Positions 19,033 through 35,149 of a stretch of 64,000 nt of DNA are shown here, piece after piece. The translations under genes were made by a program, and so were the position numbers. The DNA comes from Tetramitus jugosus (taxonomy: Eukaryota > Protista > Heterolobosea): NCBI GenBank assembly GCA_937625935.1, contig OW569381.1:310001-374000 (forward strand), given 5' to 3'. Numbering within the stretch: position 1 is the first letter of the stretch; each line of letters begins with the position of its first letter. The notes below the pieces were generated by a model that was not told the DNA's origin, did not search any database, and saw nothing but the letters and a program-made list of their open reading frames with translations.

Positions 19033-22000
19033 TCAAAAAAGGTCTTCATGTTTGCTTTCATTTCTGTTTGTTTCTTCTTTTCCTGTTGGAATCCAGAGTA
19101 GCACAGTACCGAGAGAAGCTGAAAGGCCAATCATTGCAGCCTTGTATCTGTCACTGATACTGTTGCGAATAATATTGTTGTTGTCTCCTGGAACATAAAC
19201 AGTATCATTGCATGAAGAGTATTGACATCCAATCCACACTCTATCGACATAGACTAGGAGTTCTTGTTGTTGGCTGGCTGGATTAGAATCTAACAAGCTT
19301 TGACCCAGTAATATTGAGCTACCAAGCATGAGAGAGCTCATGTTAGCTACTGGAATATCTGGAGTAAAGCTGACATGACAAAGGACAGAAGCATGACTCT
19401 TCAATTGAACGTCAATTCTCCAAGGTTGAGTGTATTCAACTATTGATTGAACCGTTGTTGGCTTGACTGCTTCTGATTCGTCATTGTTGTTCAAGCTTTC
19501 CATCTCGGGTCTCACCAATTTCACAATCATGTTGTATGCAAAGCCAGTTTCGAAAGAACAATCAGATTGAACTGACATTTCCTTTTGATTCTCTCCCAAT
19601 TTGTAAACCAAGTTGAGAGATTTTTTACCATCCATACCATTGGTAATAGCACCAAATATATGCGCTTGAGTTTCAAAGTTGGACATCCAAACTTCTAACA
19701 AATTACCAACACCATAACCAACCACAAGCTCTACATTGACTTGTCTATCCTTTCCAGTTAGTACAGCATTGTTGACCATTACTGCACTTCTGGTTAGATC
19801 ATTATTCGGCAAGACGGATGTTAAATTGACCAAAGATCGTCCTGTTCTTTCATCGTACTGAACCCACTCAATGTTTTGTGGAAGTCCAAATGATGATCGA
19901 TTCACTGAAAGGAGATCACTTACAGAATCATCAAAAGTATCATAGAACGTCTGCGATCGGGCATCCACAAAATACAAGAAGGCTTGTTCTTGTTGAGAAG
20001 TGAATTCCTCTCCCTCTACAATAGTGGAAACCAATACAACAGAGTCTTGTTGAATCTTGTCAAACTTGGGCATTGGACAGTCAATGTGATTAGAGCCAAT
20101 GTAGGTCGATGAGATTTGAATTTCTTGTTGTGTTCCGGTCTCATTCAATTGCTTAAATACACAAACAATTGTACTGGTGGGATTATAGTAAGGAGCCATA
20201 ATCTTGACAGTGTCTCCTTGGTAGGCGGTTGTTGGATAGATTCTGCTTATCTCAGTTCTGTAGACGACAATAGAAATTCCAGCAAGCATTCCAAATGCGG
20301 TAGATGTTGGTCCACCAGCCACATTGATCTTTACCTGGAACTCCGCATAACCGATATTGTCGGGAAGTGTGACAAGAGGCACGAAGCATGCGTCGCCAGA
20401 TGTTTCCATTTCGACACAATTGACCAAGTTCTGTTCGACAGTGATATCATACTCTTTGCTGTATAACACAACAGTAGATACTCCATTGAACATCAAATAT
20501 TGTCCCTGGAGTCCGATGGTGGTTTCTTGCTTGTGAATTGACAAATAAGAGGGCGAGACTGTTTGAATAGTTGGCGTCCAAGATCCTAACAGAGTAATAG
20601 ACCTTCCTTTCAGATCTCTTGGATATGGAATGTAGACGGGAGTTAATACTTCAACTGTTCTACTGATAACCATCAAGTGTTGCATGTGAGGATCATCCAG
20701 ATAGATAAACATGTCAGATTCTATCTTTGAGAAGCCAAAGAAGCCTCCAAATATTTCCACGGAGGAAACAAGAGCACCAGAGCTTCTTACTCTATAGATC
20801 ATAGATCGAGAATTGACAAAGAGCCTACCATTAGCGTACATGAGACCTTGCAAGTCGGTAATCAATGGGAACTGATTAAAGGTCGCGAAACTGGAGAAGA
20901 TACCATCTAGATTAATCATCACAATACATGTTTGACCTTCCCCATTCGTTGCGAGCACATAAATGTTGTTGTTCTCATCTCTTGTTACATAGCGAGTGTC
21001 ATTGGCTCCAGGAATAATAGAGAAATCGCCAGTAGAATGCAAGGTTTCATTTCTGTGCAGTAGGTCTAAGATATGAACCTTAATCTGAACCGAGAGAGAA
21101 ACGATTGTGATTTGCGTGGCACTATCTACAAAGACTGTGGTCGAATCAGCCACTTCAATTTCGAATGATTGGATGAATTGAGGAATAATGGATGATCCTG
21201 AATGTTCGATCTTGTAGATACCTCCATTCATAAAGAGCATAAAAACATTGGAGTATTGGTTATACACGACCTTGGAGGCTGTAGGAATAACATATGAAGA
21301 GACAATCTTTCCGCAAGAATTGTCAGCTATGGCAATAATTTGATCACCACCTTCATCAAAGGTCGAAACCATGATGTATGTTTCCGCACAGATATCATCT
21401 TGAGCTTCACAATCAGCACCAGTATATCCAGATTGGCAGACGCAAGTGTCTGGTTGAACACAAGTACCATTTCCAGAGCAAGAAGAACTATTTGATGCAG
21501 GAATTGAATAACAAGTTGGAATCTCACAATTTGATCCAGTCCAACCAGGAGCACAACCAGTACAAGCATTTGGTTCTGAACACTCACCCCGTCCACTACA
21601 CACTGTAGGATCAACTGCACTAATACCATCACAGGTTGGATGTTGACACTTATCGCCCGAGTATCCATTTAGGCAGCTGCATCTGTCAGGACCGATACAG
21701 CTTCCGTGGTCAGAGCATGCTCCACCAGTTTCTTCGATACCGAAGCATACATTCACATCACAATTTCCACCTGTTTTGCCATAGGTACAATTACAAACAT
21801 CTGGGGCTGTACAAGTTCCTTCATTTGAGCAAACTTGTGGATAAATGGCTTCTGTTGAGTAACATATTGGAACAGCACAATCAAATCCAGAGTATCCTTC
21901 AGTACAATTACATCTATTTGGTCCATAGCACGTACCATGACCATTACAGACATCGTTGTCAGTTTGATTGAGGCCGAAACATACATTCTCCTCGCAATTA

Positions 22001-25000
22001 ATTCCAGTTCTGCCGACGAAGCAGTCACATGTATCAGGTAAAACACAGAAACCATTTCCAGAACAGACATTTCGTTTGGTTGATCTAACTCCAAAACAAG
22101 TTGGGATGCTACAGTCCATGCCTTCATACTTGGATGTACAGTTACACTTGTTAGGCTCATAGCAGTCACCATTTCCAGAACAAACTTCTAATTCTGTAGA
22201 ATTGACCTCGAAACAACTAGGATAGAAACATTCTAATCCAGAGTATCCGTACTTACAATCGCAGTCATTTGGTGATAGACAAGTGCCGTGACCTGAACAC
22301 ACATGAGTGGTATCATTTGAGAGTTTTCCGTAGCATATCGACAACTGACATTGAGCGCCAGCGTATCCGTCATCACACGTGCAGGAATTAGGTCCCGAAC
22401 ACATACCATGACCAGAACACACAGTAGGATCATTGTCTAGTTTTCCATAACAATTACTATATTCGCAATCGGTACCATTGTAACCCGGTGAACAGGTACA
22501 TTGATCCGGCAAATCACATCTTCCTCTTCCATGGCATATCTGTGTGGAATTGTACTCGAGAACACCATTACAAATATTTTGTTCGCACTCCAAGCCTCCA
22601 TAGCCCTTTTGACAAGCACATAAATCAACATTTAGACAATTTCCACGTCCCCTATCTGCATTACAAGCTGGAGGATCAGTCGTCGAGTTCTTTCCAAAAC
22701 AAACCAGTGGAACACACTCGCCATTTTCGAAATGTGTCATACAAGTACAATTGTTGTAGTCAATACAAGAACCATTTCTTCCATAGTTACAAACGGCTGG
22801 ATCAATGGCTGTCCTATTGAAACAGATTGGCGTAGAACAATATTGATCAGTGAAACCAGTCTTACATGAACATTTGTTCGGACTTGTACACGAGCCGTGA
22901 CCTGAACAAGCTAATCTAGAATCAACAGTTAAATTATTTGTTGCTTGAGGAAGTTGGAGAATGGATTCAATACCTGTTACTCTATCGACAAACCGAGAGT
23001 AACAGACAGGAGCACTGCAATTTCCTCCTGTGTAACCAGGTTGAGGAGTATTGAAACATAGACAATTATCCGGAGTGAAGCAGAATCCTTTTCCACTGCA
23101 AACCAATGGATCAGAAGTATTACGACCATAGCAAACAGTATGTTCACAGTTTGATCCGACATATCCTGGATCACATGTACAGTTTCCTGGAGCAACACAA
23201 CGACCATGACCTGAACAGACTTTAGAATCCACCGAAGCAACACCAAAACAGGCGTCATATTGACACACATCTCCTAAGTATTGTCCTCCAGTACAAACAC
23301 AAGTATCCAAGTACTTGCATTCACCGTGACCACTGCAAACAGTTGGATCAGTAGCATTGACTCCATTACAGGATGTAAACTCACAATTCAAACCAGAGAA
23401 GCCATTCTTACAAACACAAGTATCCCAACCCACACATGTTCCATTTCCTGAGCACACGTCTGAGTCGTCTTGAAGTACGTTGAAACAAGTTGTTCCATTG
23501 AACAATGTCAAAGAATGGAAGCGACCCGCCGCCACAAATTGACTGGATCTACGAGTATAGTTTCCGACTTGAACAGGCACTGAATGAGAATAAGTATTAT
23601 TGACTCCTAACTGTCCATTGATGTTATAGCCCCAACCAAATAGTAATCCATCATCGGATAGAGCTAGCATGAATCCGGAACTTCCACCAGTTAACTTCAC
23701 AATAGTGTGGTTCACGACCGCTCCAACCACCTGCTTTGGTGTTGGACTATCAATGTATGTTCCGGAACCCAATTGACCCACGTCATTGGCACCCCAACAA
23801 AACACTTTACCATACTTTGTGAGAGCACAAGAGAAGAATTCTCCTCCGGAAACTTCGACAATAAGTTGATCTTCGAGACCTAGCACCTTCTGGGGAATTA
23901 AACTGAAGGTTGAGGAGGTTGTTCCATCACCCAGCTGTCCTCTTGAATTATCTCCCCATCCATAAACTATTCCATCAATCGAAAGGGCAAGAGAGTGGTA
24001 TGCTCCGGCAAAAGAAGTTGCCGCCTTCTTTATCGAGAAGATGCTCATGACTCGAATTGGTCGATACTTGGACTTTGAGGTACTAGTTGTTCCATCTCCC
24101 AATTGCGCATGCTCGTTTCCTCCCCAAGCATAGATTTCTCCAATTGAAGTGACAGCGAGGCAGTGACCAAGACCACAGGAAACTTGGATAACTTGAAGAT
24201 TCGCTAATCCTGTAATGACAGTAGGGGTGGTTCTTTGTCCTCCCGAATTGCCTAATCCCAACTGACCATAAACGTTACTGCCCCACGAGTAAGTAGAGTA
24301 GTTGCTGTCGATAGCCACAGCAAATGAATAACCCGCAGTGATGGTAGAGATATTTCCAGACACTTTGTTCAGGACAGGAATACGAGCATTGTTGGTCGTT
24401 CCATCTCCCAGTTGCCCTTGATCATTGATACCAAAGGCATACACATCGTTAGTAGTAGAAATAGCGAATGAGAAGGATAGACCAGATGCTAGATATCTCA
24501 TTGGCTTGCGATCAATTGTAGAAGCTCGTCCCTTAATCAGTACACGACTATCCACAATACCACCATCACCTAACTGAGACACTTGATCCTGACCTGTACC
24601 GTACATGTAACCAAATGATTGATCCTCGCAATCAACTCCTCTCCATTGAGGATAACACACACATGTATTGTTTGGCAAGCACTGTCCGTGACCACTACAG
24701 ATCATCGGATCTGTGCTATTTCTTCCATTACAGGCAACAACACTGCAATCACGGTATTGGAAGCTAGGAGCACATTGGCATACGTCATTGGCGATACAAA
24801 CACCTCTTGAAGAGCAAACATTCTCATCATCGGAAAGGAATCCAAAGCAAGCTGTTGCATTGTACAAAAAGGCTGTATGGGTTCTTCCAGGAGCAATCGA
24901 TATAATATATCTGTCACGATAAGTATTCAGTACTTTGACTGCAGAGTTTCTTTGACTGAACGAGTTATCTCCCAATTGACCATAAGTATTACTACCCCAT

Positions 25001-28000
25001 GAATGGGCTGCTCCCTCTCTGCTCAATACAAATGCACTATCACGTCCTCCATAAACAGTTCTCGGATTGGTAATGTTTGTGACAACTCTTTGGGGAGTTG
25101 GTTTGTACTGAACAAGAGTTGAATTGTCACCTAGTTGTCCAAAGAACGCCCCTCCCCACGCATAGACTCCATTGTCTAGCGACACCATGTAGGTATTGTC
25201 CGATGAGCCGACAGCAGAGATGGCAATCTTGCCTCTAATGGCAGGAGGTGAGACCTCTGTTGGAGAATACTTGTTAAATGTTGAGCCATCTCCCAATTGA
25301 CCATAAGAATTACTACCCCATGCATACAATACTCCAAAAGGACCAATAGCAAGAGAATGCCTGTATCCGGCAGAAATAAAAGCGATAGGAATGTTGTCAA
25401 TGAGTCCATCTCCTACACGCACAGGCAAGACTTGAATTCTATTGGAGCCATCTCCCAACTGACCATCTACATTGTTACCCCAGCCATAGATTGTACCAGT
25501 TTCACTCAGAGCGAGCGTGTGGAATGCACCACATGCAACATTGATGATGGTTTCGTTGGCAATGACGCCTAGAACTCGGGTTGGCAGAGGAACATTTTGG
25601 AACGAATAATCTCCATTGCCTACTTGGCCATAATAGTTACTGCCCCAAGCGTAAACCTGTCCATGTTCGTCAACTGCCGCTCCGTGACTATTACCGGCAC
25701 AAACAGCGACAATCTTGGTCTGTATTCCGACTACAGCAACAGGAGTCGATCGATCAATCGTAGAATTATCACCCAATTGAGATGCATCATTCACTCCCCA
25801 ACCGTACATTTGACCTGTGGTCGATACAGCAATAGAAAAGTCTATTCCTGATGCAATACCAGACATTGCCTTACCAGTTATCAAACCTCCGACAGATGTT
25901 GGAAGAGTCTGAGTGAAGGTATAGCCATCTCCAAGCTGAGATTTACTGTCATCACCGAGAGAATACACGTATCCGGACACGACAGTTTCACATTGATCAC
26001 CACGATATCCAGGCTTACAGATACATGCGTCAGCGGCGATGCAAAATCCTCTACCTGAGCACACTAGTGGATCTGTTCCATTGCGACCAAAACAATTGTA
26101 GCTGCTGCAATCATCTGCATTATAGAATGGGAAACATTGACAAGTGTCTTGTGCAATACATTGTCCTTTGGAGGAACACACTGAGGGATCTTCGACAAAC
26201 TTTCCGAAACAGGTTGTTCCATTAAGGAGGAACAAAGAGAAAGTATTACCAGCAGCTACATCAACTGCATAGGTCAGAGTATAAGGATTGACAACAGTCA
26301 CAGGCTTTGATACCGAGGTGATATTGTAACTGCCATTACCGAGCTCGCCGTAATAGTTGTCTCCCCAAGAGTATGTAGTAGTGTTTTCGCTCAATGCCAA
26401 AACAAAGTTTCCTCCGGCACTTAATGTACTGATTCTATTGTTGGCAGGAAGTCCAAGCACTGCTACAGGATTCAGTTTGTCTACTAAAGTTCCGTCTCCC
26501 AATTGACCATTGCTATTTGCTCCCCAGGAGAAAACAGCACCATCAGCAGTCAAACAGGTCGAAAAGTACATTCCTGCTGCCACAGATTTGACAGTTCTTC
26601 CAAACAACAGTCCGGCAACTTGAACAGGCAAAATTTTCATTGTTGTGGTTGTATCTCCCAATTGGCCTCGGTTGTTCATACCCCAATTGTACACTGTTCC
26701 GTCACTTCCGAGAGCAATGGAATGATAGGCACCCGAAGAAATTGACACAATTTTCTTGTCAGAAAGAAGACCTCCGACTGTTACCGGCAGGAGTCTATTC
26801 GTTTGGCTATTGTCTCCTAGTTCTCCATCTAAATTGTATCCCCAGGTGTATATTACTCCTGTATCAGCGAGAGCGAGCGAGTGATAGTATCCGCAAGAAA
26901 TTGCCACAATGGTGTGTCCTGAAAGTGCAGAAACTTGAACTGGAGTCCAAGAAGAGGATGTACTATTGATTCCCAATTGACCATATCGATTGTCTCCCCA
27001 ACTGTACACATTACCCGAAATGTCGAGTGCCATAGCATGAGAGAAACCGCCACACAAGCCTACTATGTTTTTAGCTTTTAGAGATGGAATCTGAACAGGT
27101 AAACTGCGGTTTTGATTCGTTCCATCACCCAACTGTCCATATTGGTTGTTACCAACTCCGTAAACAGTTCCATCAACCGATCGAAGCAGAGTGTACTTGT
27201 AAGCTCCCACAACCAAGTGCATTGGGATTCCCATAAAGAGACGAGCTTGAACTACAGTTGGCTGAATACCAATATTTCTACTACCCAATTGAGAGTCGGA
27301 ATCATCACCAGATGTGAAGACAAAGCCATAGTTGGATACTTGACAGTTGTTCCCACTGTATCCTTGTCTGCAAACGCAGGTATCCAAGGAAATGCAACGA
27401 CCATGACCTGAACATACATTTGGATCTGTGCCATTCTTTCCATAGCAAATGGAAACACTGCAGTCAGGTCCAGTATAGTTGGGTTGGCACGAACAGGTGT
27501 CAGTTGCAGTACAGTTGCCATGCCACGAGCAAACTGTAGGATCATCATATAGAATTCCAAAACAGGCCGTACCGGCATACAAATAAAGAGAATGAGTTTT
27601 TCCGGCAGATACAGACGTAATGTATCTCTGCGGTTTGGTGTTCGTGACGGCGACTGGAGTCTTTCGGGGATCAATAAATGTTCCATCTCCCAATTGACCT
27701 TTTACGTTCTCTCCCCAAGCAAACGCCGTTCCGTTCGTATTGAAGGCTACGGCAAAGTTACCTGCGGTACCAGCTACGAGGTTTGTCATGTTCACGATAG
27801 GATTCAAAGTTGGAAGTGGCTTGTTCACAATAGTGTTGTCACCAATATTACCCTTGCTGTTTAATCCCCACGAGTAAATGCTACCATCATTTGCCATTGC
27901 ATAGGTAGTGGAAGCTCCAGAGGAAATTGAGCGAATGCTCTTTCCAGCAACGATACCCAATACTGGGTAAGGCCTCACTCTACCGAGTATTTTGCCATCA

Positions 28001-31000
28001 CCTAATTGTCCTACTGAATTGTCACCCCAACTGAACATTGAGCCATCCTCGGCAAGAGCAACAGAATGAATACTACCTGCAGCAATATCAATGATTCTTT
28101 TGATGTTCAGTAATTGTTGGACTCTGTAAGCAGTGTTCCTTGATCCGGTTTTGGTTCCATCTCCCAGCTGTCCATTTGTGTTCAATCCCCACGTGTACAC
28201 ACGTCCGTCATCGGTAAGGGCCATCGAGTGAGATGAGCCACAGGCAATAGAGACGACAGTTTGGTTTACCAGACCCTTAACAGCAGTTGGTAAATAGTAG
28301 GAAACGAGATCTCCTGTACCTAGTTGTCCATAGGTATTCATACCCCAGGAGAACACTGCGCCTGAAGTATCGAGAGCCAGAGCATGAGTACTACAAGCTA
28401 CAATACGAGAAATGAACTTATCAGCAAGAATTTTTGCAGGGTAGTATCTGTTGACAGTTGTTCCATCTCCAAGTTGACCCTGACCGTTATAACCAAGGGC
28501 GAATACACCATCATTGAAGTTGACAGCAAAAGAGAAGCCATCTCCTGCGGCTGCAAAGTGGAACAATTGTCTGGAGAAGATACTCGATTGGCGAGGATAA
28601 TTCTGAGTCGAGAAAAAGCCATCACCCAGCTGCGAATACGTATCATCACCCGAGGCAAACAAGAACCTCTGATCGGCTGATTCACATTCAAGTCCAGAGT
28701 AGCCTGGTGAGCAAACACAGTTGTCCTTGTAGACACATCTTCCGTTACCGGAGCAAACTGATGGATCATCACCAGTAACATTAAAGCAGATTGCGATAGA
28801 ACAGTTTTGACCAGTGTAACCAGAGTCACAAATACATATATCGGGGCCCACACAGTCTCCTCTGAATGAACAAACACTTGGGTCATCGTCTGGAATGAAT
28901 GAACAGTATGTTGTGTTGTAAAGGAACACAGAGTGGGTGGATGCACCCGATACCGCGACAGCTACTCTGTTTGAAAACTTTCTAATGACTGGAGTTGGGC
29001 TATTCTTGAGAACGACAGTGTTATCTCCAATTTGCCCGTTTGTATTCTCTCCCCATCCAAAGGTAGTACCATTGGAAGAAGTTGCAAGGACATAATCGGA
29101 CCATGTTCCAGCAGAGAGAGATGTAATGTTATTCAATGTTGAGATTAGGACTGGAAAACGTTGCTGAGCAGTAGATCCAATACCAAGTTGACCTGTTATT
29201 TAATGTCAATAGATTGTTAGTTTAGAAATGAAAAATCACTCGGAGAAACGCTCCTTACAAAAAAAGTTAGACAAATTGTCCTTACCCTTGGTATTGTCAC
29301 CCCATACGTAAACTCTTCCGTCAGTCGTCACTGCATATGACGAGACGCGTCCCGCAGCGATTTTCGCTACCGATTGTCCAAAGAGAGCACCATTCACTCT
29401 TCGAGGATTTCTTTTGTTTACCAGTGTGGCGTCACCGAGTTGGCCAACGTTGTTATATCCCCATGAGTATACTTCTCCGTTTTCTCCAAGAGCCAACGAG
29501 TGGGAATCTCCAGCTGCAATAGAAACAATGTTCACATTTCCGAGCATTCCTCCAATGGAAGAATCGGAACCTACAGAAACTGCAGTGTACTGATACGATG
29601 TGGCTGTACCGTCTCCCAGCTGGCTTTGTGCATTATACCCCCACGAGAAGACAGTTCCGTTGGCAGTCAGAGCCAGGGAATGATATGAACCACAGGCAAC
29701 TTGGATAACTGGTTGATTGGCAGGAATGCCAACCACAAGTCGAGGAGTGTATGAGAAGTAGTAACTGGAACCTAAACCAAGTTGACCTGTTATTGTAGGA
29801 TAGTAACCAGAGGGACAACTGCAGGACGTTTCCGAACAAGCATATCCATAGTAGGAACATACTGTTGTAAATGAGAGAGTATTTACTCCCCAAGCCCAAA
29901 CTCTTCCATTCGAGTCAGCAGCTAGAGTATGTCCTGTACTGGAGCAAACACTGACAATCTTAGTTCCTGGAAGAATTCTAATTGGGCGATTTTGATTTGA
30001 TGTTGTTCCATCACCCAAAATGCCATAAATATTTTTTCCCCATGAATACAACTCATTGTCAGTTGTAATTGCGAACGATGCATCAACACCAGAGCTAATT
30101 AGTTTGGTATATTTCATGTATGTCAATGGATAGGCAGTCTGGACTGGGAGCCTTTGTGCATCATAGTAATCATCGCCCAATTGACCATACGAATTATCAC
30201 CGAGAGTAAAGGTTAAACCAAAGATTGGTTGCTCACAATTTGGACCAGTGTATTCACTGCTGCAAGAGCAAGAATCTACAGCAACACATGTTCCATGAGA
30301 GGAACAAACTTCAGAATCTGTTGAATTGAATCCAAAGCAACTATTGATGCTACAATCATCTCCATAGTAGCCAGGTTGACAATCACATGTATCTGTGTCT
30401 GTACAAACACCATGCCATGAACAAACATTAGGATCATCAGATAGAATTCCATAGCAAAAAGTGCCATTATACAGGAACATGGAATGAGTTGATCCTCCAG
30501 AAGCAGCAATAATCCTGCGAGAAGGATAAGTATTGACGACTGGCACAGGAGATGTTCTCTGGGTGGTAGTACCATCTCCCAGCTGACCATAAGAATTTAC
30601 TCCCCATCCATAGGCTGTTCCATTTGCACTGACAGCTAACGTGAAGGCACTCTCCTTACTCGTGGTGACGGATATGATTTGAACACCAACCAAACCCTTG
30701 ACCAAAGTTGGAACAATTCTTTGTGTAGTTGTACCATCTCCCAGCTGACCATTGGAATTCAGACCCCAGGAGTAAACAAGCCCATCACTTGTGACAGCAA
30801 AAGAACTCGTTACTCCAGCTGCAATATCTACCACAACTTTTCCAGCAAGAGCTCCTAATACCAGCATTGGAGTTCGTTTATCTGTCGTAGTGCTGTCACC
30901 TAGTTGACCATTGCCGTTAATTCCCCAGGCATACACTTCTCCATTAATTCCAAGAGCCAATGTATGATAGTTTCCTGACGAAATCTTGATAATGTTGACA

Positions 31001-34000
31001 CCGTTAATGATACCCAAAACTTGAGTAGGATTATAAATGTAAGAGTAGGTGCCATAGGAACCGATACCCACCTCTCCATCACGATTAAAACCAAAGGACC
31101 AAACTGTACCATTTGCTGTCATAACTGTTGTATGACCACGACCACAAGCAACATTGATAGGAAGCTGTGAGGCGGCGATACCAGACACAGCGACGGGAAC
31201 AGCGGAATATCGAGAGGAGGAACCACCGAGAGGTCCAAGATTTCCGTAATTACATCCACCGACAGGACAACCTGAAGACATATCTCCAAAGAAGGAACTA
31301 CCCCATCCTAGAATCACTCCTCGGTCACTGACTGCAAAGGAATGGAAACTTCCAGCACAGATATCTACAATGTTGTTTGTAGGAGGACGGAGTGAACTAA
31401 CAAGATATGGCTTTTGACGATCTGTTGTAGTGCCATCTCCAATAGTGGTTGCATAATTTCGTCCGTTGGTCATAACTGAACCATCAGTTGTTAGAACAAC
31501 TGAAAAATCACCTCCAGCCTGAACGTTTGAGACGAATCTTCGAGTCAATTGACCAGTCATCAACACAGGAGAGACAGTGTTGACCATATCATCATCTGCT
31601 AATTGGAAAACATTATTTTGACCAAGAGCATATGCCAAGCCGAACATTTCTAGTTCACAACTGGCTCCTGTGAAACCTTTTCTACATATGCAAGTATCCA
31701 AGGCGACACAACTTCCTCGAGATGAACAGACAGACTCAGATGTTGATGAGATATTGAAGCAGGTGAATGTGCTGCAATCTGGTCCAAAATATCCATCTTG
31801 GCAACTACAAGTGTCCATCAAGGTGCAGTTTCCATGATAGGAACATACACTAGGGTCGTCAGATGGGATTCCAAAGCAAGAATCTGTAATGTTGTAAAGA
31901 ATGAGAGAGTGTCCGTAACCTGTGGAAACAGCTACGGCTCTTCTGTTGGGATAATAAAGACTGTAGCTCTTTGGACTATTGGTTTGAGTGATAGTACCAT
32001 CTCCCAATTGCCCAAGACTGTTACTACCAAACACAAACGTGGTTGCATTAGCAGTTAAAACCATTACGTGAGTAGTCACATAAGAAGGATGGATCACGGC
32101 TCCGCTAACTCTTACAACTTGCTCATTGGCCAACAATCCTACCACTTTGGTAGGAGCAGATCTCTGAGTAACACTACCATCTCCCAGCTGCCCATATCCG
32201 TTATACCCCCATGAGTAAAGAACTCCGTCAGAAGTGACCGCGTAGGAGGATGCTTGACCTGCTGAAAGTGTGACTACCTTTTTTCCTGATAGCAAACCAG
32301 TAACTTGATAGGGTAGAAGCGAATTGGTGGCTGTTCCATCACCTATCTGATTGTATCCGTTATATCCAAATGAGTACACTGTTCCATCTGCAACTAAGGC
32401 CAATGTGTGATGTCCTCCAAGAGATATAACTGAAATTCGTTTTTTGTAAAGAACACCCGCTATGTACACCTGAGTAGGTGTCAGCTTGTTTGTGGTAGTA
32501 CTGTCTCCCAATTGCCCGTATGCGTTATAACCCCAGGTAAACATGGTACCATTGGCAATCAACGCAGCAGAGTGGTAATTACCACAACTGACTGCTACGA
32601 CTGTTTGATTGGCCAATAGACCTTGAACCATGAGAGGGACAGCTGAAAAGGAAGGACTTCCTGAGCCTTGACCCAATTGACCATAGGAGTTGTCTCCAAA
32701 GGCATACACTGTTCCATTTTTGTCCAAAGCAAGAGAGTGCAAATATCCAGCACATGAACCAACAATGTTGTTTGAAGGTAAAACTGGATAAGGTACTGAT
32801 CTTGCATTCCTGGTTCCATCACCCAAATTACCTTGGCTGTTAAAACCAAAAGAATACAATGTACCATTGGGAAGATTCACCAGAGAGAAGGATACTCCAG
32901 CAGCGATACGAGCGATAGGGACTCCTCTGAAAGCTGTGGCAAGGATCGGAACATATTGCGCCAGGGAAGTTCCTGTATTTAGGTCTCCCAATTGCCCATA
33001 GGTGTCATCACCGCTCGCATGTAAATATCCAACTATTGAATTTTGACACTGATCTCCATTGTATCCATCATAACAGATACAAGTTTCATTAGTCATACAC
33101 TGACCGTTACCTGAGCAAACTGTTGGATTTGAAGCATTCAATCCATAGCAAATGGGAATACTGCAATCAAATTCGGAGAATCCAGGATTACAAACGCAAG
33201 TGTCGGTGGCGACACAAGCTCCGTGAGCGGAACATACGTTGGCATCTTCTGCAAAAACAGAGTAACATGTTGTACCATTCACCATGAATAGAGCATGAGA
33301 CTCACCTGCAGATATAGTAGTAAATGTACTAGATGGGAATGGAGTACTTGTCTTGACAAGAGCTGCATTCGTCGTGACTGTAGTGCCAGCACCAAACATG
33401 CCATAAGTATTTTCTCCCAGAGCATAAACGGAAGAAGTATTAGTGATCATATAGACAGAGCTGGATGTGCAACCAGCATAGATCGTTGAGACAAACTTGA
33501 CTGCTGCAGGATAGATAACTTGAACAGGAGTACTCTTCATAACTACTGTACCATCTCCCAGCTGTCCATTAGAGTTCGATCCCCACGAGAAGAGAAGTCC
33601 GTCAATCGTAAGGGCATAAGAAGCCAAATTGTTTGCCGCAATAGAGACTGCGTACTTTCCTGTAAGCAATCCTTCAACCAGCATAGGAGCGGTGACCAAA
33701 TGTACACCGCTGTTACCATCTCCCAGCTGTCCAATGGTCGACGAACCCCATGCATAGACCGTTCCATCATTTGCAAGAGCCACAGTATGTAACTGTCCGC
33801 AAGCGAGAGAAACAATTGTGGTGTACATGATACTTAGAGTGACTCGTCTTGGAGTTTCTCTATTGATAGTGGTACTATCACCAATCTGACCACCTTGATT
33901 AGATCCCCAGGCATAGACTGCACCAGTGGAAGTCAATGCCATGGAGTGAACTTTTCCACAGTAGACTCCAACAGCGTTCGTTGGAATGGTACCAGCGGCA

Positions 34001-34901
34001 ACTGCTTTGGGGAGATAGGAACTTGTTTTGTCACCAACACCATAACCTAGCCAACCCCAATCGAGAGTTCCTTGAGTATTGGTTCCCCAAGTGTATACCG
34101 TACCGTTGGAATCGAGAGCAACGGAATGGTATGTGCAAGCAGCAATTGAAATAATTCTCTTGCCAGCCAACGCGCCACCAATTTGGGTGGGAAGATATTG
34201 GGTAGTCGTATCACCAGTACCAAGTTGACCTGTTATTTAACGTCAATAGATTGTTAGTTTCGATCGTTGGAAGTATGAAAAATACACAAAAAAAAACGAG
34301 ATACAAAAAATTTTCACTTACCATAACCGTTGTAGCCCCATGCATAGACGACTCCACTGTCAGTTAATGCGAGAGAGTATCTTGAACCTGCTGAAACTGC
34401 ATTAATTCCAAGAAGACCAAACCAAGAAGAAACACGAAAGAGTGAACTCTTCCATGTAGTAAAGCCATCTCCAAGTTGACCTGTCGTTTCATGTCAAAAC
34501 ATTGTTAGTTGCGAACTTGTCAGAAAATGAAATGAAAAAATTTTTCAGACATAAACTCACCATAATTGTTGAGACCACTCGAATACGAGTAGCCAATGTT
34601 CTGTAATTCACAATTGGAACCAGAATGACCTGCGAAGCAAGTGCACACATCATTTGCAATACAAAAACCATTGTTACTGCAAACACCAGCAGTTGTTGAA
34701 TCGATGCCAAAGCACGTGGTTGCTGCTGATGTGCTACCAACTACACGATCGTTTTTAATGAGTGAAGAAATGAGCGTTGGTTAGTATTCATTCAACTAAA
34801 ACATAAAGGCGAGTCCATGGAAAAGTTTCACACATACTGAGAGACACTATCAGAGCAACACTGACAATAATACAACACAGAAATAAATTATTCAATTTCA
34901 T
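19033..34901 (-). CDS. Giant (~5,170 aa) predicted type I membrane protein: signal peptide, EGF, 8 RCC1/BLIP-II propellers separated by EGF pairs, 17-EGF stalk, IPT/TIG-like region, TM. Exons 34901-34838, 34740-34561, 34480-34322, 34229-29286, 29192-19033
   Basis: Signal peptide MKLNNLFLCCIIVSVALIVSL; four phase-1 GT-AG introns, each with ACTAAC, join all exons in frame (15,507 nt); dozens of WGxNxxGQLGDGT repeats; CFG..VCSGxGxC..C.C..GYxGxxC EGFs; hydrophobic AAMIGLSASLGTVLLWIP near the end. Confidence 0.9.
29193..29285 (-). repeat. Intron 4 of the giant gene; its 3' end is a near-identical copy of intron 3
   Basis: 3'-terminal 31 nt AAACTAACAATCTATTGAC(A/G)TTAAATAACAG match 34230-34260 at 30/31, plus 12 identical exon nt. 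Confidence 0.85.
34230..34560 (-). repeat. Introns 3 (34321-34230) and 2 (34560-34481), homologous to intron 4, flanking a 159-nt exon that encodes one RCC1 repeat
   Basis: Same G|GT CAA CTT GG insertion point; intron 2 matches intron 4 at 25/30 nt at the 3' end. Confidence 0.85.
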
Positions 34902-35149
34902 TCTTCTGTGTGAGTATGAGTGAGTGTCAAATAGAGAAAGATGTGCACTTGATTATAATTATAAGAATTAGAGAGTGTGTGTTGTGGTAGCTGCCGTTGC
35001 TTATGTTGTTTTAGGTGAAGGGGAAGCCACACACGTAGCCCAAAAGTCCAGCAGCACCCAAGGTCAATGGCCTGTCGAAAGATAATGCCCGCACATAGGG
35101 TTTTCTGACAAGTGCGATTTGTCAAATGTCAGTAATCTTAGCTCGTCCG

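What the first reader, a model, noticed from the sequence alone, without database searches (positions are those of the whole stretch)
19033..34901. Giant beads-on-a-string surface receptor: 8 extracellular RCC1/BLIP-II propellers on EGF spacers and a 17-EGF stalk
Seen: signal peptide, one EGF, eight propellers separated by seven EGF pairs, 17 tandem EGFs, membrane-proximal beta domains and a TM (~5,170 aa), with many N-x-S/T sequons and two RGD tripeptides. Known: eukaryotic RCC1 propellers are normally intracellular, whereas secreted WGxNxxGQLGDGT repeats are typical of bacterial BLIP-II-like surface proteins. Inference: an undescribed multivalent adhesin, prey-recognition or self-recognition receptor built by grafting bacterial-type propellers onto a eukaryotic EGF scaffold.
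Basis: partly seen in the sequence, partly recalled or inferred. Interest (0 to 1): 0.8.

Follow-up and report, generated by a model that had tools for sequence, protein, structure and literature searches.

The report
Giant propeller-studded amoeba surface protein
This is a real, expressed amoeba gene for a roughly 5,170-residue cell-surface protein that carries eight different RCC1-type propellers on a chain of 32 EGF modules; it belongs to a gene family I found no description of and probably binds outside surfaces at many points, but the sequenced copy has lost half of its membrane anchor.

Summary
A five-exon gene on the minus strand (34901 to 19033) encodes 5,168 aa. The layout is signal peptide, one EGF, eight RCC1-like propellers separated by seven EGF pairs, a 17-EGF stalk, then a 790-aa module that no Pfam family matches. 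I resolve that module as a small six-bladed propeller, two apparent Ig-like sandwiches and a ConA-like lectin fold.

Spliced contigs from three independent soil metatranscriptome studies confirm introns 2-4, so the two large ORFs form one transcript. Exon 1 has no RNA cover, but five paralogs keep the same signal exon and intron phase. Strain differences are mostly synonymous (pN/pS about 0.09).

The membrane helix is only half present. The assembly lacks 56 bp, which shifts the frame, relative to a 99%-identical metagenome contig that encodes a full helix and a 40-aa tail.

The gene is one of at least nine giant paralogs in this 26-Mb genome. The scan had already reported a 16-propeller paralog on other DNA. 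The same propeller-EGF ectodomain also sits on receptor kinases here.

A bacterial origin of the propellers is unresolved, and BLIP-II is a poor match. The RGD count is at chance. Function is inferred as multivalent adhesion or particle recognition. Self-recognition looks unlikely.

The parts
34838..34901 (-). Exon 1: start codon and signal peptide (21 codons plus 1 nt, phase 1, GTATGT donor)
   Evidence: highest hydrophobicity of the protein. Five paralogs have an equivalent short signal exon ending in a phase-1 GTATGT donor. No RNA contig covers it.
34741..34837 (-). Intron 1 (97 nt, GTATGT...CTAAC...TAG), predicted only
   Evidence: No spliced contig reaches it.
34561..34740 (-). Exon 2: first EGF (aa 42-65, window 34610-34681) and the start of propeller 1
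   Evidence: RNA contigs cover it (records 14 and 19).
34481..34560 (-). Intron 2 (80 nt), cutting the YG|QLG point of an RCC1 blade
   Evidence: Spliced joint 34478/34559 in X8 and X11.
34322..34480 (-). Exon 3 (53 codons, part of propeller 1)
34230..34321 (-). Intron 3 (92 nt), at the same blade position
   Evidence: Spliced joint 34227/34320 in X8, X9 and X11.
29286..34229 (-). Exon 4 (1,648 codons): rest of propeller 1, propellers 2 and 3, most of propeller 4, and three EGF pairs (33046-33234, 31657-31845, 30235-30423)
   Evidence: Pfam (protein 2). Domain map. RNA cover. pN/pS about 0.09.
29193..29285 (-). Intron 4 (93 nt), joining the two large ORFs
   Evidence: Spliced joint 29190/29284 in X8, X9 and X11. 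X8 record 15 continues about 2.5 kb into exon 5.
23455..29192 (-). Exon 5, first part: end of propeller 4, propellers 5-8 (27532-28683, 26179-27342, 24817-25989, 23455-24627) and four EGF pairs
   Evidence: Pfam (protein 1).. PDB sequence search with propeller 5. Position-by-position orthology with paralog C43.
21409..23454 (-). 17-EGF stalk (teneurin/tenascin-type EGFs, 102 Cys)
   Evidence: PF25024 at 275 bits and PF23106 at 259 bits. Cys count. Map.
20614..21387 (-). Small six-bladed beta-propeller, first domain of the family-specific C-terminal module
   Evidence: AF2 model with pLDDT 88 and pTM 0.87. VIA Z 11-14 to Kelch, YWTD and NHL six-bladed propellers. No Pfam match.
19969..20601 (-). 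Two apparent Ig-like beta-sandwich domains (predicted, no domain-level fold search)
   Evidence: The AF2 model shows strands only and pLDDT mostly 75-92. Foldseek gives generic propeller-plus-Ig-legs matches to plexin, ROS1 and integrin alpha. The Atlas IPT/TIG lead at 0.77 is weak.
19204..19959 (-). ConA-like (legume-lectin / GH16-like) jelly-roll domain next to the membrane
   Evidence: VIA Z 15-17, rmsd 3.1-3.7, 187-215 residues aligned to 5ly8, 5zbt, GH16 enzymes and ERGIC-53/VIP36. I saw no GH16 ExDxxE motif in alignment A1.
19036..19140 (-). Truncated membrane helix (17 hydrophobic residues, 19090-19140) and 18 frameshifted residues before the stop. The 56-bp deletion point is at about 19090
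   Evidence: Alignment with paralogs. Metagenome contig L010 carries 56 extra bases that restore a 30-residue helix and a 40-residue tail. The own genome has only the deleted form.

Best explanation
The locus is one real gene for a giant type I surface glycoprotein of a free-living amoeba. It belongs to a lineage-restricted family built from a repeated cassette of a seven-bladed RCC1-like propeller plus two EGFs.

Shown: the gene structure, its transcription and splicing in natural soil populations, purifying selection, the domain order, and the family context.

Inferred mechanism: the 32 EGF modules form a long, disulfide-stiffened filament, of the order of 100 nm if extended, held in the plasma membrane by a single helix. 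Because the two ends of an RCC1 propeller lie side by side, the eight propellers would hang off the filament like beads. They are only 31-47% identical to one another, yet each is conserved position by position in the closest paralog. That pattern suggests eight distinct binding faces.

Together with a membrane-proximal six-bladed propeller and a lectin-fold domain, the protein would bind extracellular ligands at many weak points, so that avidity holds the cell to them. Likely ligands are glycans or proteins on bacteria, other particles or the substratum. A short basic tail would link it to the cell cortex.

In the sequenced strain, a 56-bp frameshifting deletion removes half of the helix and the tail. 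This particular allele is therefore probably poorly anchored or non-functional.
For: Gene model and open frame.
Splicing of introns 2-4, and E4 joined to E5, in three metatranscriptome studies.
Signal exon conserved in five paralogs.
Pfam RLD and EGF scores far above cut-off.
Eight propellers 31-47% identical to each other, but 43-57% to the same-position propeller of paralog C43 against 30-43% off the diagonal.
pN/pS about 0.09 in exon 4 (31 synonymous, 9 non-synonymous) and 8 synonymous to 3 non-synonymous in the C-terminal module.
Lectin-fold and six-bladed propeller domains.
Intact helix plus tail in an environmental allele.
The same RLD-EGF ectodomain sits on type I receptor kinases (signal peptide, 2 RLDs, EGFs, membrane helix, kinase) and on a REJ-domain receptor in the same genome. 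This argues that the extracellular RLD is a ligand-sensing module.
Against: No ligand, localisation or phenotype is known. Binding is inferred from architecture and fold alone. The ConA-like and propeller folds show no function by themselves (tool notes). Exon 1 is not covered by RNA. The assembled allele lacks a proper anchor, so in this strain the protein may be secreted, retained or degraded. The RNA evidence comes from environmental strains 95-99% identical to the window, not from the sequenced strain.
Confidence: 0.55

Rival explanations
1. Structural cell-coat (glycocalyx) protein. The EGF filament with bulky glycosylated propellers serves as a spacer or protective brush, for example against desiccation, enzymes or unwanted contact. 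It would have no specific ligand recognition.
For: Huge size, 32 EGFs and a mild excess of N-glycosylation sequons (77 against 61 +/- 7). Many paralogs of different length, with 6 to 16 propellers, would fit a layered coat. The tail of this subfamily is short.
Against: Each propeller position is conserved as a distinct sequence across paralogs and is under strong purifying selection. That is more than a spacer would need. RLD-EGF ectodomains also sit on receptor kinases, which need a ligand. Six paralogs keep a conserved cytoplasmic motif of about 35 residues, which suggests coupling to an intracellular partner.
Confidence: 0.2
2. Self/non-self, kin or mating recognition receptor, analogous in role to the Dictyostelium TgrB1/TgrC1 pair. 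Recognition would rely on allele-specific propeller surfaces.
For: A large paralogous family of surface proteins with many distinct propellers. The membrane-proximal domains look Ig-like.
Against: Strain differences over 5.8 kb and 1.3 kb are about 1% and mostly synonymous (31:9 and 8:3). Known allorecognition genes show the opposite pattern, as far as I know. One caveat applies: alleles more than 5% different would not have been laid at the setting used.
Confidence: 0.07
3. Decaying gene. The copy in this genome is a pseudogene in the making, and the architecture is a relic.
For: A 56-bp frameshifting deletion removes half of the helix and the tail. The genome holds no intact second copy. Eight other giant paralogs could cover the function.
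Against: The 15.5-kb frame is otherwise intact. The gene is transcribed and correctly spliced in three soil studies. pN/pS is about 0.09. An environmental allele has the full helix and tail.
Confidence: 0.12
4. Origin claim of the first reader. The ancestral extracellular propeller was acquired from bacteria, where giant secreted multi-RLD proteins are common, and then fused to eukaryotic EGFs.
For: Bacterial giant proteins with up to 13 RLDs are the best non-EGF matches (28-42% identity). Tree path lengths to the nearest bacterial RLDs (1.9-2.3) are a little shorter than to this genome's own four small-ORF RLDs, which carry no EGF (2.4-2.9). The strict WGxNxxGQLG[DN]G[TS] motif is about as frequent as in bacterial RLDs (1.25 against 0.92 per domain) and rarer in the own small-ORF set (0.25, n=4). 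One bacterial RLD (P0087) falls inside the clade.
Against: The bacterial set was picked from billions of proteins for likeness to the query, while only four comparison RLDs without EGF, from this genome's own small ORFs, were available. The tree is unrooted. Among solved structures, eukaryotic UVR8 and HERC2 score about 200 bits and bacterial BLIP-II scores 36. Transfer in the other direction is equally possible.
Confidence: 0.3

Closest known systems
Giant RLD-EGF paralogs of the same genome (contigs C43, C24, C22, C51 three times, C40, C28), including the 16-propeller protein this scan reported earlier (s1-553195)
   Same: Same signal exon, N-terminal single EGF, propeller/EGF-pair cassette, long EGF stalk, C-terminal module with 36 invariant columns, and membrane helix. 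C43 has the same eight-propeller layout with position-by-position orthology.
   Different: Only 28-33% identity to those paralogs in the C-terminal module (20% to the small member L008). This gene has four introns, while the others I read show one long ORF after the signal exon. Its cytoplasmic tail is short and lacks most of the conserved motif. The assembled allele has a 56-bp deletion in the helix.
Bacterial giant secreted multi-RLD proteins (for example the Verrucomicrobia/Prosthecobacter 'choice-of-anchor D domain-containing protein' P0004, 5,671 aa)
   Same: Many RCC1-like propellers in tandem in a very large extracytoplasmic protein, at 28-42% identity.
   Different: No EGF spacers. They use bacterial spacer and anchor domains (Ig-like, cadherin-like, FN3, PhoD-like, T9SS tail). 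There is no eukaryotic signal exon or introns, and their function is equally unknown.
LDL-receptor family (LRP1, LRP2/megalin, LRP4-6)
   Same: Type I receptors in which beta-propellers alternate with EGF modules along a long ectodomain and act as multi-ligand binders (my own knowledge). YWTD propellers of LDLR, LRP4 and LRP6 appear among fold matches of the small C-terminal propeller.
   Different: Six-bladed YWTD propellers rather than seven-bladed RLDs. No LDL-A or Ldl_recept_b Pfam hits here. The tail shows no NPxY motif. The layout is a convergent design, not homology.
Eukaryotic intracellular RLDs (UVR8, HERC2, HERC1, RPGR, RCC1)
   Same: Same sequence family and the best solved-structure matches (204 to 141 bits).
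   Different: Those are cytosolic or nuclear, usually with one to three RLDs per protein. Here eight RLDs follow a signal peptide and alternate with disulfide-rich EGFs.
Plant CRINKLY4/ACR4 receptor kinases
   Same: A known case of an extracellular propeller distantly related to RCC1 and BLIP-II on a eukaryotic surface receptor (PMC4617170). This amoeba also has receptor kinases with RLD-EGF ectodomains.
   Different: Crinkly repeats are about 39 aa and only distantly RCC1-like. CRINKLY4 has one propeller, TNFR-like repeats and a kinase. This gene has no kinase and carries typical 51-68-aa RCC1 repeats.
Teneurins and tenascins
   Same: The EGF subtype (PF25024 EGF_TEN at 275 bits, PF23106 at 259 bits).
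   Different: No YD shell, no toxin-like domain, and the opposite membrane orientation.

Membership tests
RCC1-like domain (Pfam PF25390 WD40_RLD, PF00415 RCC1) | Profile match above the curated cut-off over nearly the whole 363-position domain | tested here: met
   1027 and 887 bits against a cut-off of 150. Best stretches span 2-362 and 4-363 of 363. Matches on the window's contig are also listed.
RCC1-like domain (Pfam PF25390 WD40_RLD, PF00415 RCC1) | Seven repeats of about 51-68 aa per domain, each with the GQLG-type hairpin | tested here: met
   Eight EGF-delimited intervals of 384-423 aa. 45 PF00415 and 38 PF13540 stretches. 59 blade-motif hits, a few of them overlapping. No 3D model of a propeller was made.
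RCC1-like domain (Pfam PF25390 WD40_RLD, PF00415 RCC1) | Guanine-nucleotide exchange or other known intracellular partner binding | not testable with these tools
   The signal peptide and EGF context make an intracellular role unlikely.
BLIP-II-like secreted propellers | Close sequence similarity to Streptomyces BLIP-II | tested here: not met
   36 bits (E 2.7e-8) to 1jtd_B, against 204 bits to UVR8. The two share only the superfamily.
Teneurin | EGF_TEN repeats | tested here: met
   PF25024 at 275.5 bits and PF23106 at 259 bits.
Teneurin | YD-repeat shell, NHL domain, C-terminal toxin-like domain, type II orientation | tested here: not met
   No such Pfam hits at E <= 0.01 or in the C-terminal module at E <= 10. 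The N-terminal signal and C-terminal helix give a type I orientation.
LDL-receptor family | LDL-A modules and YWTD (Ldl_recept_b) propellers | tested here: not met
   Absent from the Pfam results. Only the alternating propeller/EGF layout is shared.
Amoebal giant RLD-EGF surface family (undescribed; defined in this scan) | Short signal exon with phase-1 GTATGT donor, then a single EGF | tested here: met
   for this gene. Five paralogs show the same.
Amoebal giant RLD-EGF surface family (undescribed; defined in this scan) | Repeated cassette of RLD propeller plus EGF pair, then a long EGF stalk | tested here: met
   Eight propellers, seven pairs and 17 EGFs here. Paralogs have 6-16 propellers.
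Amoebal giant RLD-EGF surface family (undescribed; defined in this scan) | Conserved C-terminal module of about 790 aa (six-bladed propeller, Ig-like domains, ConA-like domain) ending in the DRVW-x-x-C motif | tested here: met
   E 1e-122 to 3e-36 to eight places in the genome. 36 invariant columns. Profile search.
Amoebal giant RLD-EGF surface family (undescribed; defined in this scan) | Membrane helix of about 30 residues followed by a basic stop-transfer and a cytoplasmic tail | tested here: not met
   In the assembly only 17 hydrophobic residues remain. The feature is met in the environmental allele L010.

The most novel reading that the evidence does not exclude
Extracellular RCC1 propellers are the general ligand-recognition unit of this amoeba lineage. 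On this reading they play the part that LRR or Ig domains play elsewhere. They would be deployed on giant multi-propeller capture filaments such as this one, on receptor kinases, and on REJ/GPS-type receptors. Each conserved propeller position would recognise a different microbial or substrate ligand, making the family a pattern-recognition and phagocytic receptor system of an independent design.
Probability: 0.3. Interest if true: 0.8.

Novelty: new variant of a known kind. Interest (0 to 1): 0.6.

Why it matters
How free-living amoebae recognise and hold prey and surfaces is poorly understood at the receptor level. This gene family offers concrete, testable candidates. It is a very large, expressed and selectively constrained set of surface proteins whose binding units are RCC1 propellers, a fold known in eukaryotes almost only from intracellular regulators.

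The design of propellers alternating with EGFs on a single-pass receptor parallels the animal LDL-receptor family and appears to have arisen independently. The same ectodomain on receptor kinases suggests a whole sensing toolkit.

The 56-bp lesion in the sequenced strain is a practical warning. Work on this gene should start from an intact allele or from a paralog.

Tried and rejected
Word-index protein searches with the C-terminal module found nothing. This held both when it was searched as a region of exon 5 and as an alignment. Only the exhaustive profile search found relatives.

The single-protein run returned one contig.

The listing of cluster members gave no organism names for any relative, so the taxonomic range of the family stays unknown.

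The Atlas feature search gave only weak leads of 0.77 or less (IPT/TIG, NHL).

Foldseek on the whole 791-aa model gave only generic propeller-plus-Ig matches, with TM 0.25 or lower.

A literature hit on coccolith proteins was spurious, because 'RCC1...' there is a culture-collection prefix. The Toxoplasma CRMP and Tetrahymena papers hold 'RCC1' and 'EGF' only a few times each; I did not open them.

I rejected three readings. RGD is not a meaningful motif here (2 against 0.9 expected). BLIP-II is not the closest relative. The 56 extra bases of L010 are not an intron, because they have no GT..AG ends and the window itself is genomic DNA.

The 1-nt insertion of L010 at about 19627 lies in an A-run, and I set it aside as a probable homopolymer error.

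No search or fold was run on the joined five-exon protein. All searches used exon pieces by reference. The exons were joined only inside local scripts, for coordinates and counts.
Full report
**Gene structure.** The minus strand between 19033 and 34901 holds two very long ORFs of 3,367 and 1,644 codons. Upstream of them lie three short exons. Splice-site mapping gives five exons: 34901-34838, 34740-34561, 34480-34322, 34229-29286 and 29192-19033. Together they make 15,507 nt and 5,168 aa with no internal stop. All four introns are phase 1 and carry a CTAAC branch site. Introns 2-4 cut an RCC1 blade at the same YG|QLG point and share nearly identical 3' ends.

**Method note.** The joined protein was used only in local scripts, for coordinates and counts. 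Every database search and fold used exon pieces by reference. The read-laying run used 5,851 letters.

**Transcription.** The stretch 29100-34950 occurs in soil, groundwater and sediment data sets. I laid contigs from three soil metatranscriptome studies (X8, X9, X11) on it. They show exact GT..AG joints that skip 93 nt (29193-29285), 92 nt (34230-34321) and 80 nt (34481-34560). X8, X9 and X11 all show the first two joints, and X8 and X11 show the third. The likely source DNA run X1 reads straight through intron 3 and shows none of the three joints. One X8 contig of 3,355 nt crosses intron 4 and continues about 2.5 kb into exon 5.

No contig reaches exon 1, so the signal exon is not shown in RNA. 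Five paralogs have an equivalent short Met-plus-hydrophobic exon that ends in a phase-1 GTATGT donor just upstream of their first EGF. The N-terminus is also the most hydrophobic window of the protein.

**Selection.** Of the 40 best-supported strain differences listed for exon 4, 31 are synonymous and 9 are not. That gives pN/pS of about 0.09. In the C-terminal 1.3 kb, a 99%-identical metagenome contig differs at 8 synonymous and 3 non-synonymous sites. The gene is under purifying selection in nature.

**Domains.** Pfam scores the two large exons at 1027 and 887 bits for the RCC1-like domain (cut-off 150). It also finds many RCC1 repeat and teneurin-type EGF hits. The cysteine-pattern map gives the following order:
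- one EGF;
- eight intervals of 384-423 aa separated by seven EGF pairs;
- a stalk with 102 Cys, which equals 17 EGFs.

The last 791 aa match no Pfam family. An AlphaFold model built on nine family sequences (pLDDT 75) and a sub-model of residues 1-275 (pLDDT 88, pTM 0.87) resolve this region into three parts:
- a compact six-bladed propeller, with Z 11-14 to Kelch, YWTD and NHL propellers;
- two beta-sandwiches that look Ig-like, with only generic plexin, ROS1 and integrin matches and no domain-level search;
- a ConA-like lectin/GH16-like jelly roll, with Z 15-17 to a phage Dit carbohydrate-binding module, an Entamoeba legume-lectin-like domain, GH16 enzymes and ERGIC-53/VIP36. I saw no GH16 catalytic motif in the alignment.

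**The anchor is damaged in this assembly.** Paralogs have a helix of about 30 residues followed by a basic stop-transfer and a tail. Here only 17 hydrophobic residues remain, followed by 18 unrelated residues and a stop. Metagenome contig L010 (Ga0256771_1025697) is 99% identical over 1.3 kb and carries 56 extra bases at window position about 19090. With them, the reading frame gives a 30-residue helix and a 40-residue basic-then-acidic tail that resembles the start of the paralogs' tail. The 56 bases are not an intron. The own genome holds only the deleted form.

**Family context.** The C-terminal module occurs at eight places in the 26.35-Mb genome. Reading the giant ORFs gives the following members besides this gene:

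| Contig | ORF length (aa) | Propellers |
|---|---|---|
| C43 | 5,514 | 8 |
| C24 | 6,312 | at least 9 |
| C22 | 6,971 | 11 |
| C51 (first) | 6,882 | 11 |
| C51 (second) | 8,381 | 14 |
| C40 | 9,248 | 16 |
| C28 | about 4,720 | 6 |
| C51 (third) | about 4,713 | 6 |

The scan had already followed up the 16-propeller member (s1-553195).

Within this protein the propellers are 31-47% identical. Each is closest to the same-position propeller of C43, at 43-57% against 30-43% off the diagonal. The array is therefore old, and each position keeps its own identity.

The genome has at least 165 RLD matches. Among the smaller genes are type I receptor kinases with a signal peptide, two RLDs, EGFs, a membrane helix and a kinase (L038, L043). 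There is also an RLD-EGF-REJ receptor (L044). A RhoGEF-PH-RLD-FYVE protein (L040), which I take to be cytosolic, represents the ordinary intracellular use of the domain.

**Relatives elsewhere.** Two metagenome proteins, P0001 (5,571 aa, 52% identity) and P0002, and an unnamed NCBI assembly contig (P0066/L009) have the same propeller/EGF-pair build. An exhaustive profile search with the C-terminal module found only 100 matches among 1.84 billion representatives. Twenty-three of them had E <= 1e-30, and the weak ones hit only the region I read as Ig-like. Of the ten I looked up, none carries more than a generic label and all come from metagenomes or unnamed assemblies. Five literature searches found no description of extracellular RCC1-EGF proteins in protists. 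The one precedent for an extracellular RCC1-like propeller is plant CRINKLY4 (PMC4617170).

**Origin.** Bacterial giant proteins with up to 13 RLDs are the next-best matches. Among solved structures, however, the propeller is closest to eukaryotic UVR8, HERC2 and RCC1, and far from BLIP-II. In a tree of 123 RLDs, all 57 EGF-linked propellers form one group (SH-aLRT 96) with one bacterial row inside. Distances to bacterial RLDs are only slightly shorter than to this genome's own small-ORF RLDs, which carry no EGF. Motif counts are similar in bacteria and in the family. Sampling is biased and the tree is unrooted, so the graft from bacteria is neither shown nor excluded.

**Minor claims.** Two RGD tripeptides against 0.9 expected is chance. 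77 sequons against 61 +/- 7 is a mild excess.

**Reading.** The best-supported explanation is a long EGF filament, anchored by one helix, that displays eight distinct propellers plus a lectin-fold base for multivalent binding of external ligands. Most likely these are prey or substrate surfaces. This function is inferred, not shown. A passive coat role is the main rival. Self-recognition is disfavoured by the low, mostly synonymous variation. The assembled allele itself may be disabled.

Noticed in passing
window 29193-29285, 34230-34321, 34481-34560: Introns 2-4 sit at the same YG|QLG codon position of three different RCC1 blades. They are all phase 1 and share an almost identical 3' end (CTAACAAT...AACAG). 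All three are removed in environmental RNA. The closest paralogs I read show no introns inside their giant ORFs.
   Followed up: partly
window 29776-29874: A 99-nt Cys-rich in-frame insert in propeller 4, at the position where other blades have the intron. Metatranscriptome contigs X8 record 15 (29284-30019) and X9 record 21 (29765-30120) run through it without a joint, so it is kept in the mRNA.
   Followed up: partly
G000 loci L038:1673-5404:+, L043:207-3965:- (also L037 and L042, judged by their C-terminal sequence): Type I receptor kinases whose ectodomain is two RCC1-like propellers plus EGFs, with a signal peptide, a membrane helix at about residue 900 and a kinase at 960-1240. There are at least four genes. 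I found no description of such receptor kinases outside the distantly similar plant CRINKLY4.
   Followed up: partly
G000 locus L044:1585-6999:+: A protein of at least 1,805 aa with a signal peptide, RLD propellers, EGFs, a PKD-like domain and a REJ domain. This is another receptor type that uses the same ectodomain cassette.
   Followed up: no
alignment A1, columns about 905-950 (paralogs L002-L007): Six giant paralogs share a strongly conserved cytoplasmic motif of about 35 residues (KLDAWKFEF..LDKNVSSLED..F..ARRMYKV). It has no Pfam match and may be a docking site for an unknown intracellular partner. This gene's intact allele keeps only a degenerate first half of it.
   Followed up: no
L009 (NCBI assembly GCA_016850925.1, contig JAESGV010000163.1): A 54.5-kb contig in an unnamed public assembly (a GCA accession, organism not given) carries a long run of RLD-EGF gene fragments, called as many short genes as if split by introns. 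It is probably eukaryotic (amoebal) DNA.
   Followed up: no
L010 position about 770 (window about 19627): The metagenome contig that carries the intact helix has one extra A in an A6 run, which would shift its own frame. This is probably a homopolymer error, but a second damaged allele is not excluded.
   Followed up: partly
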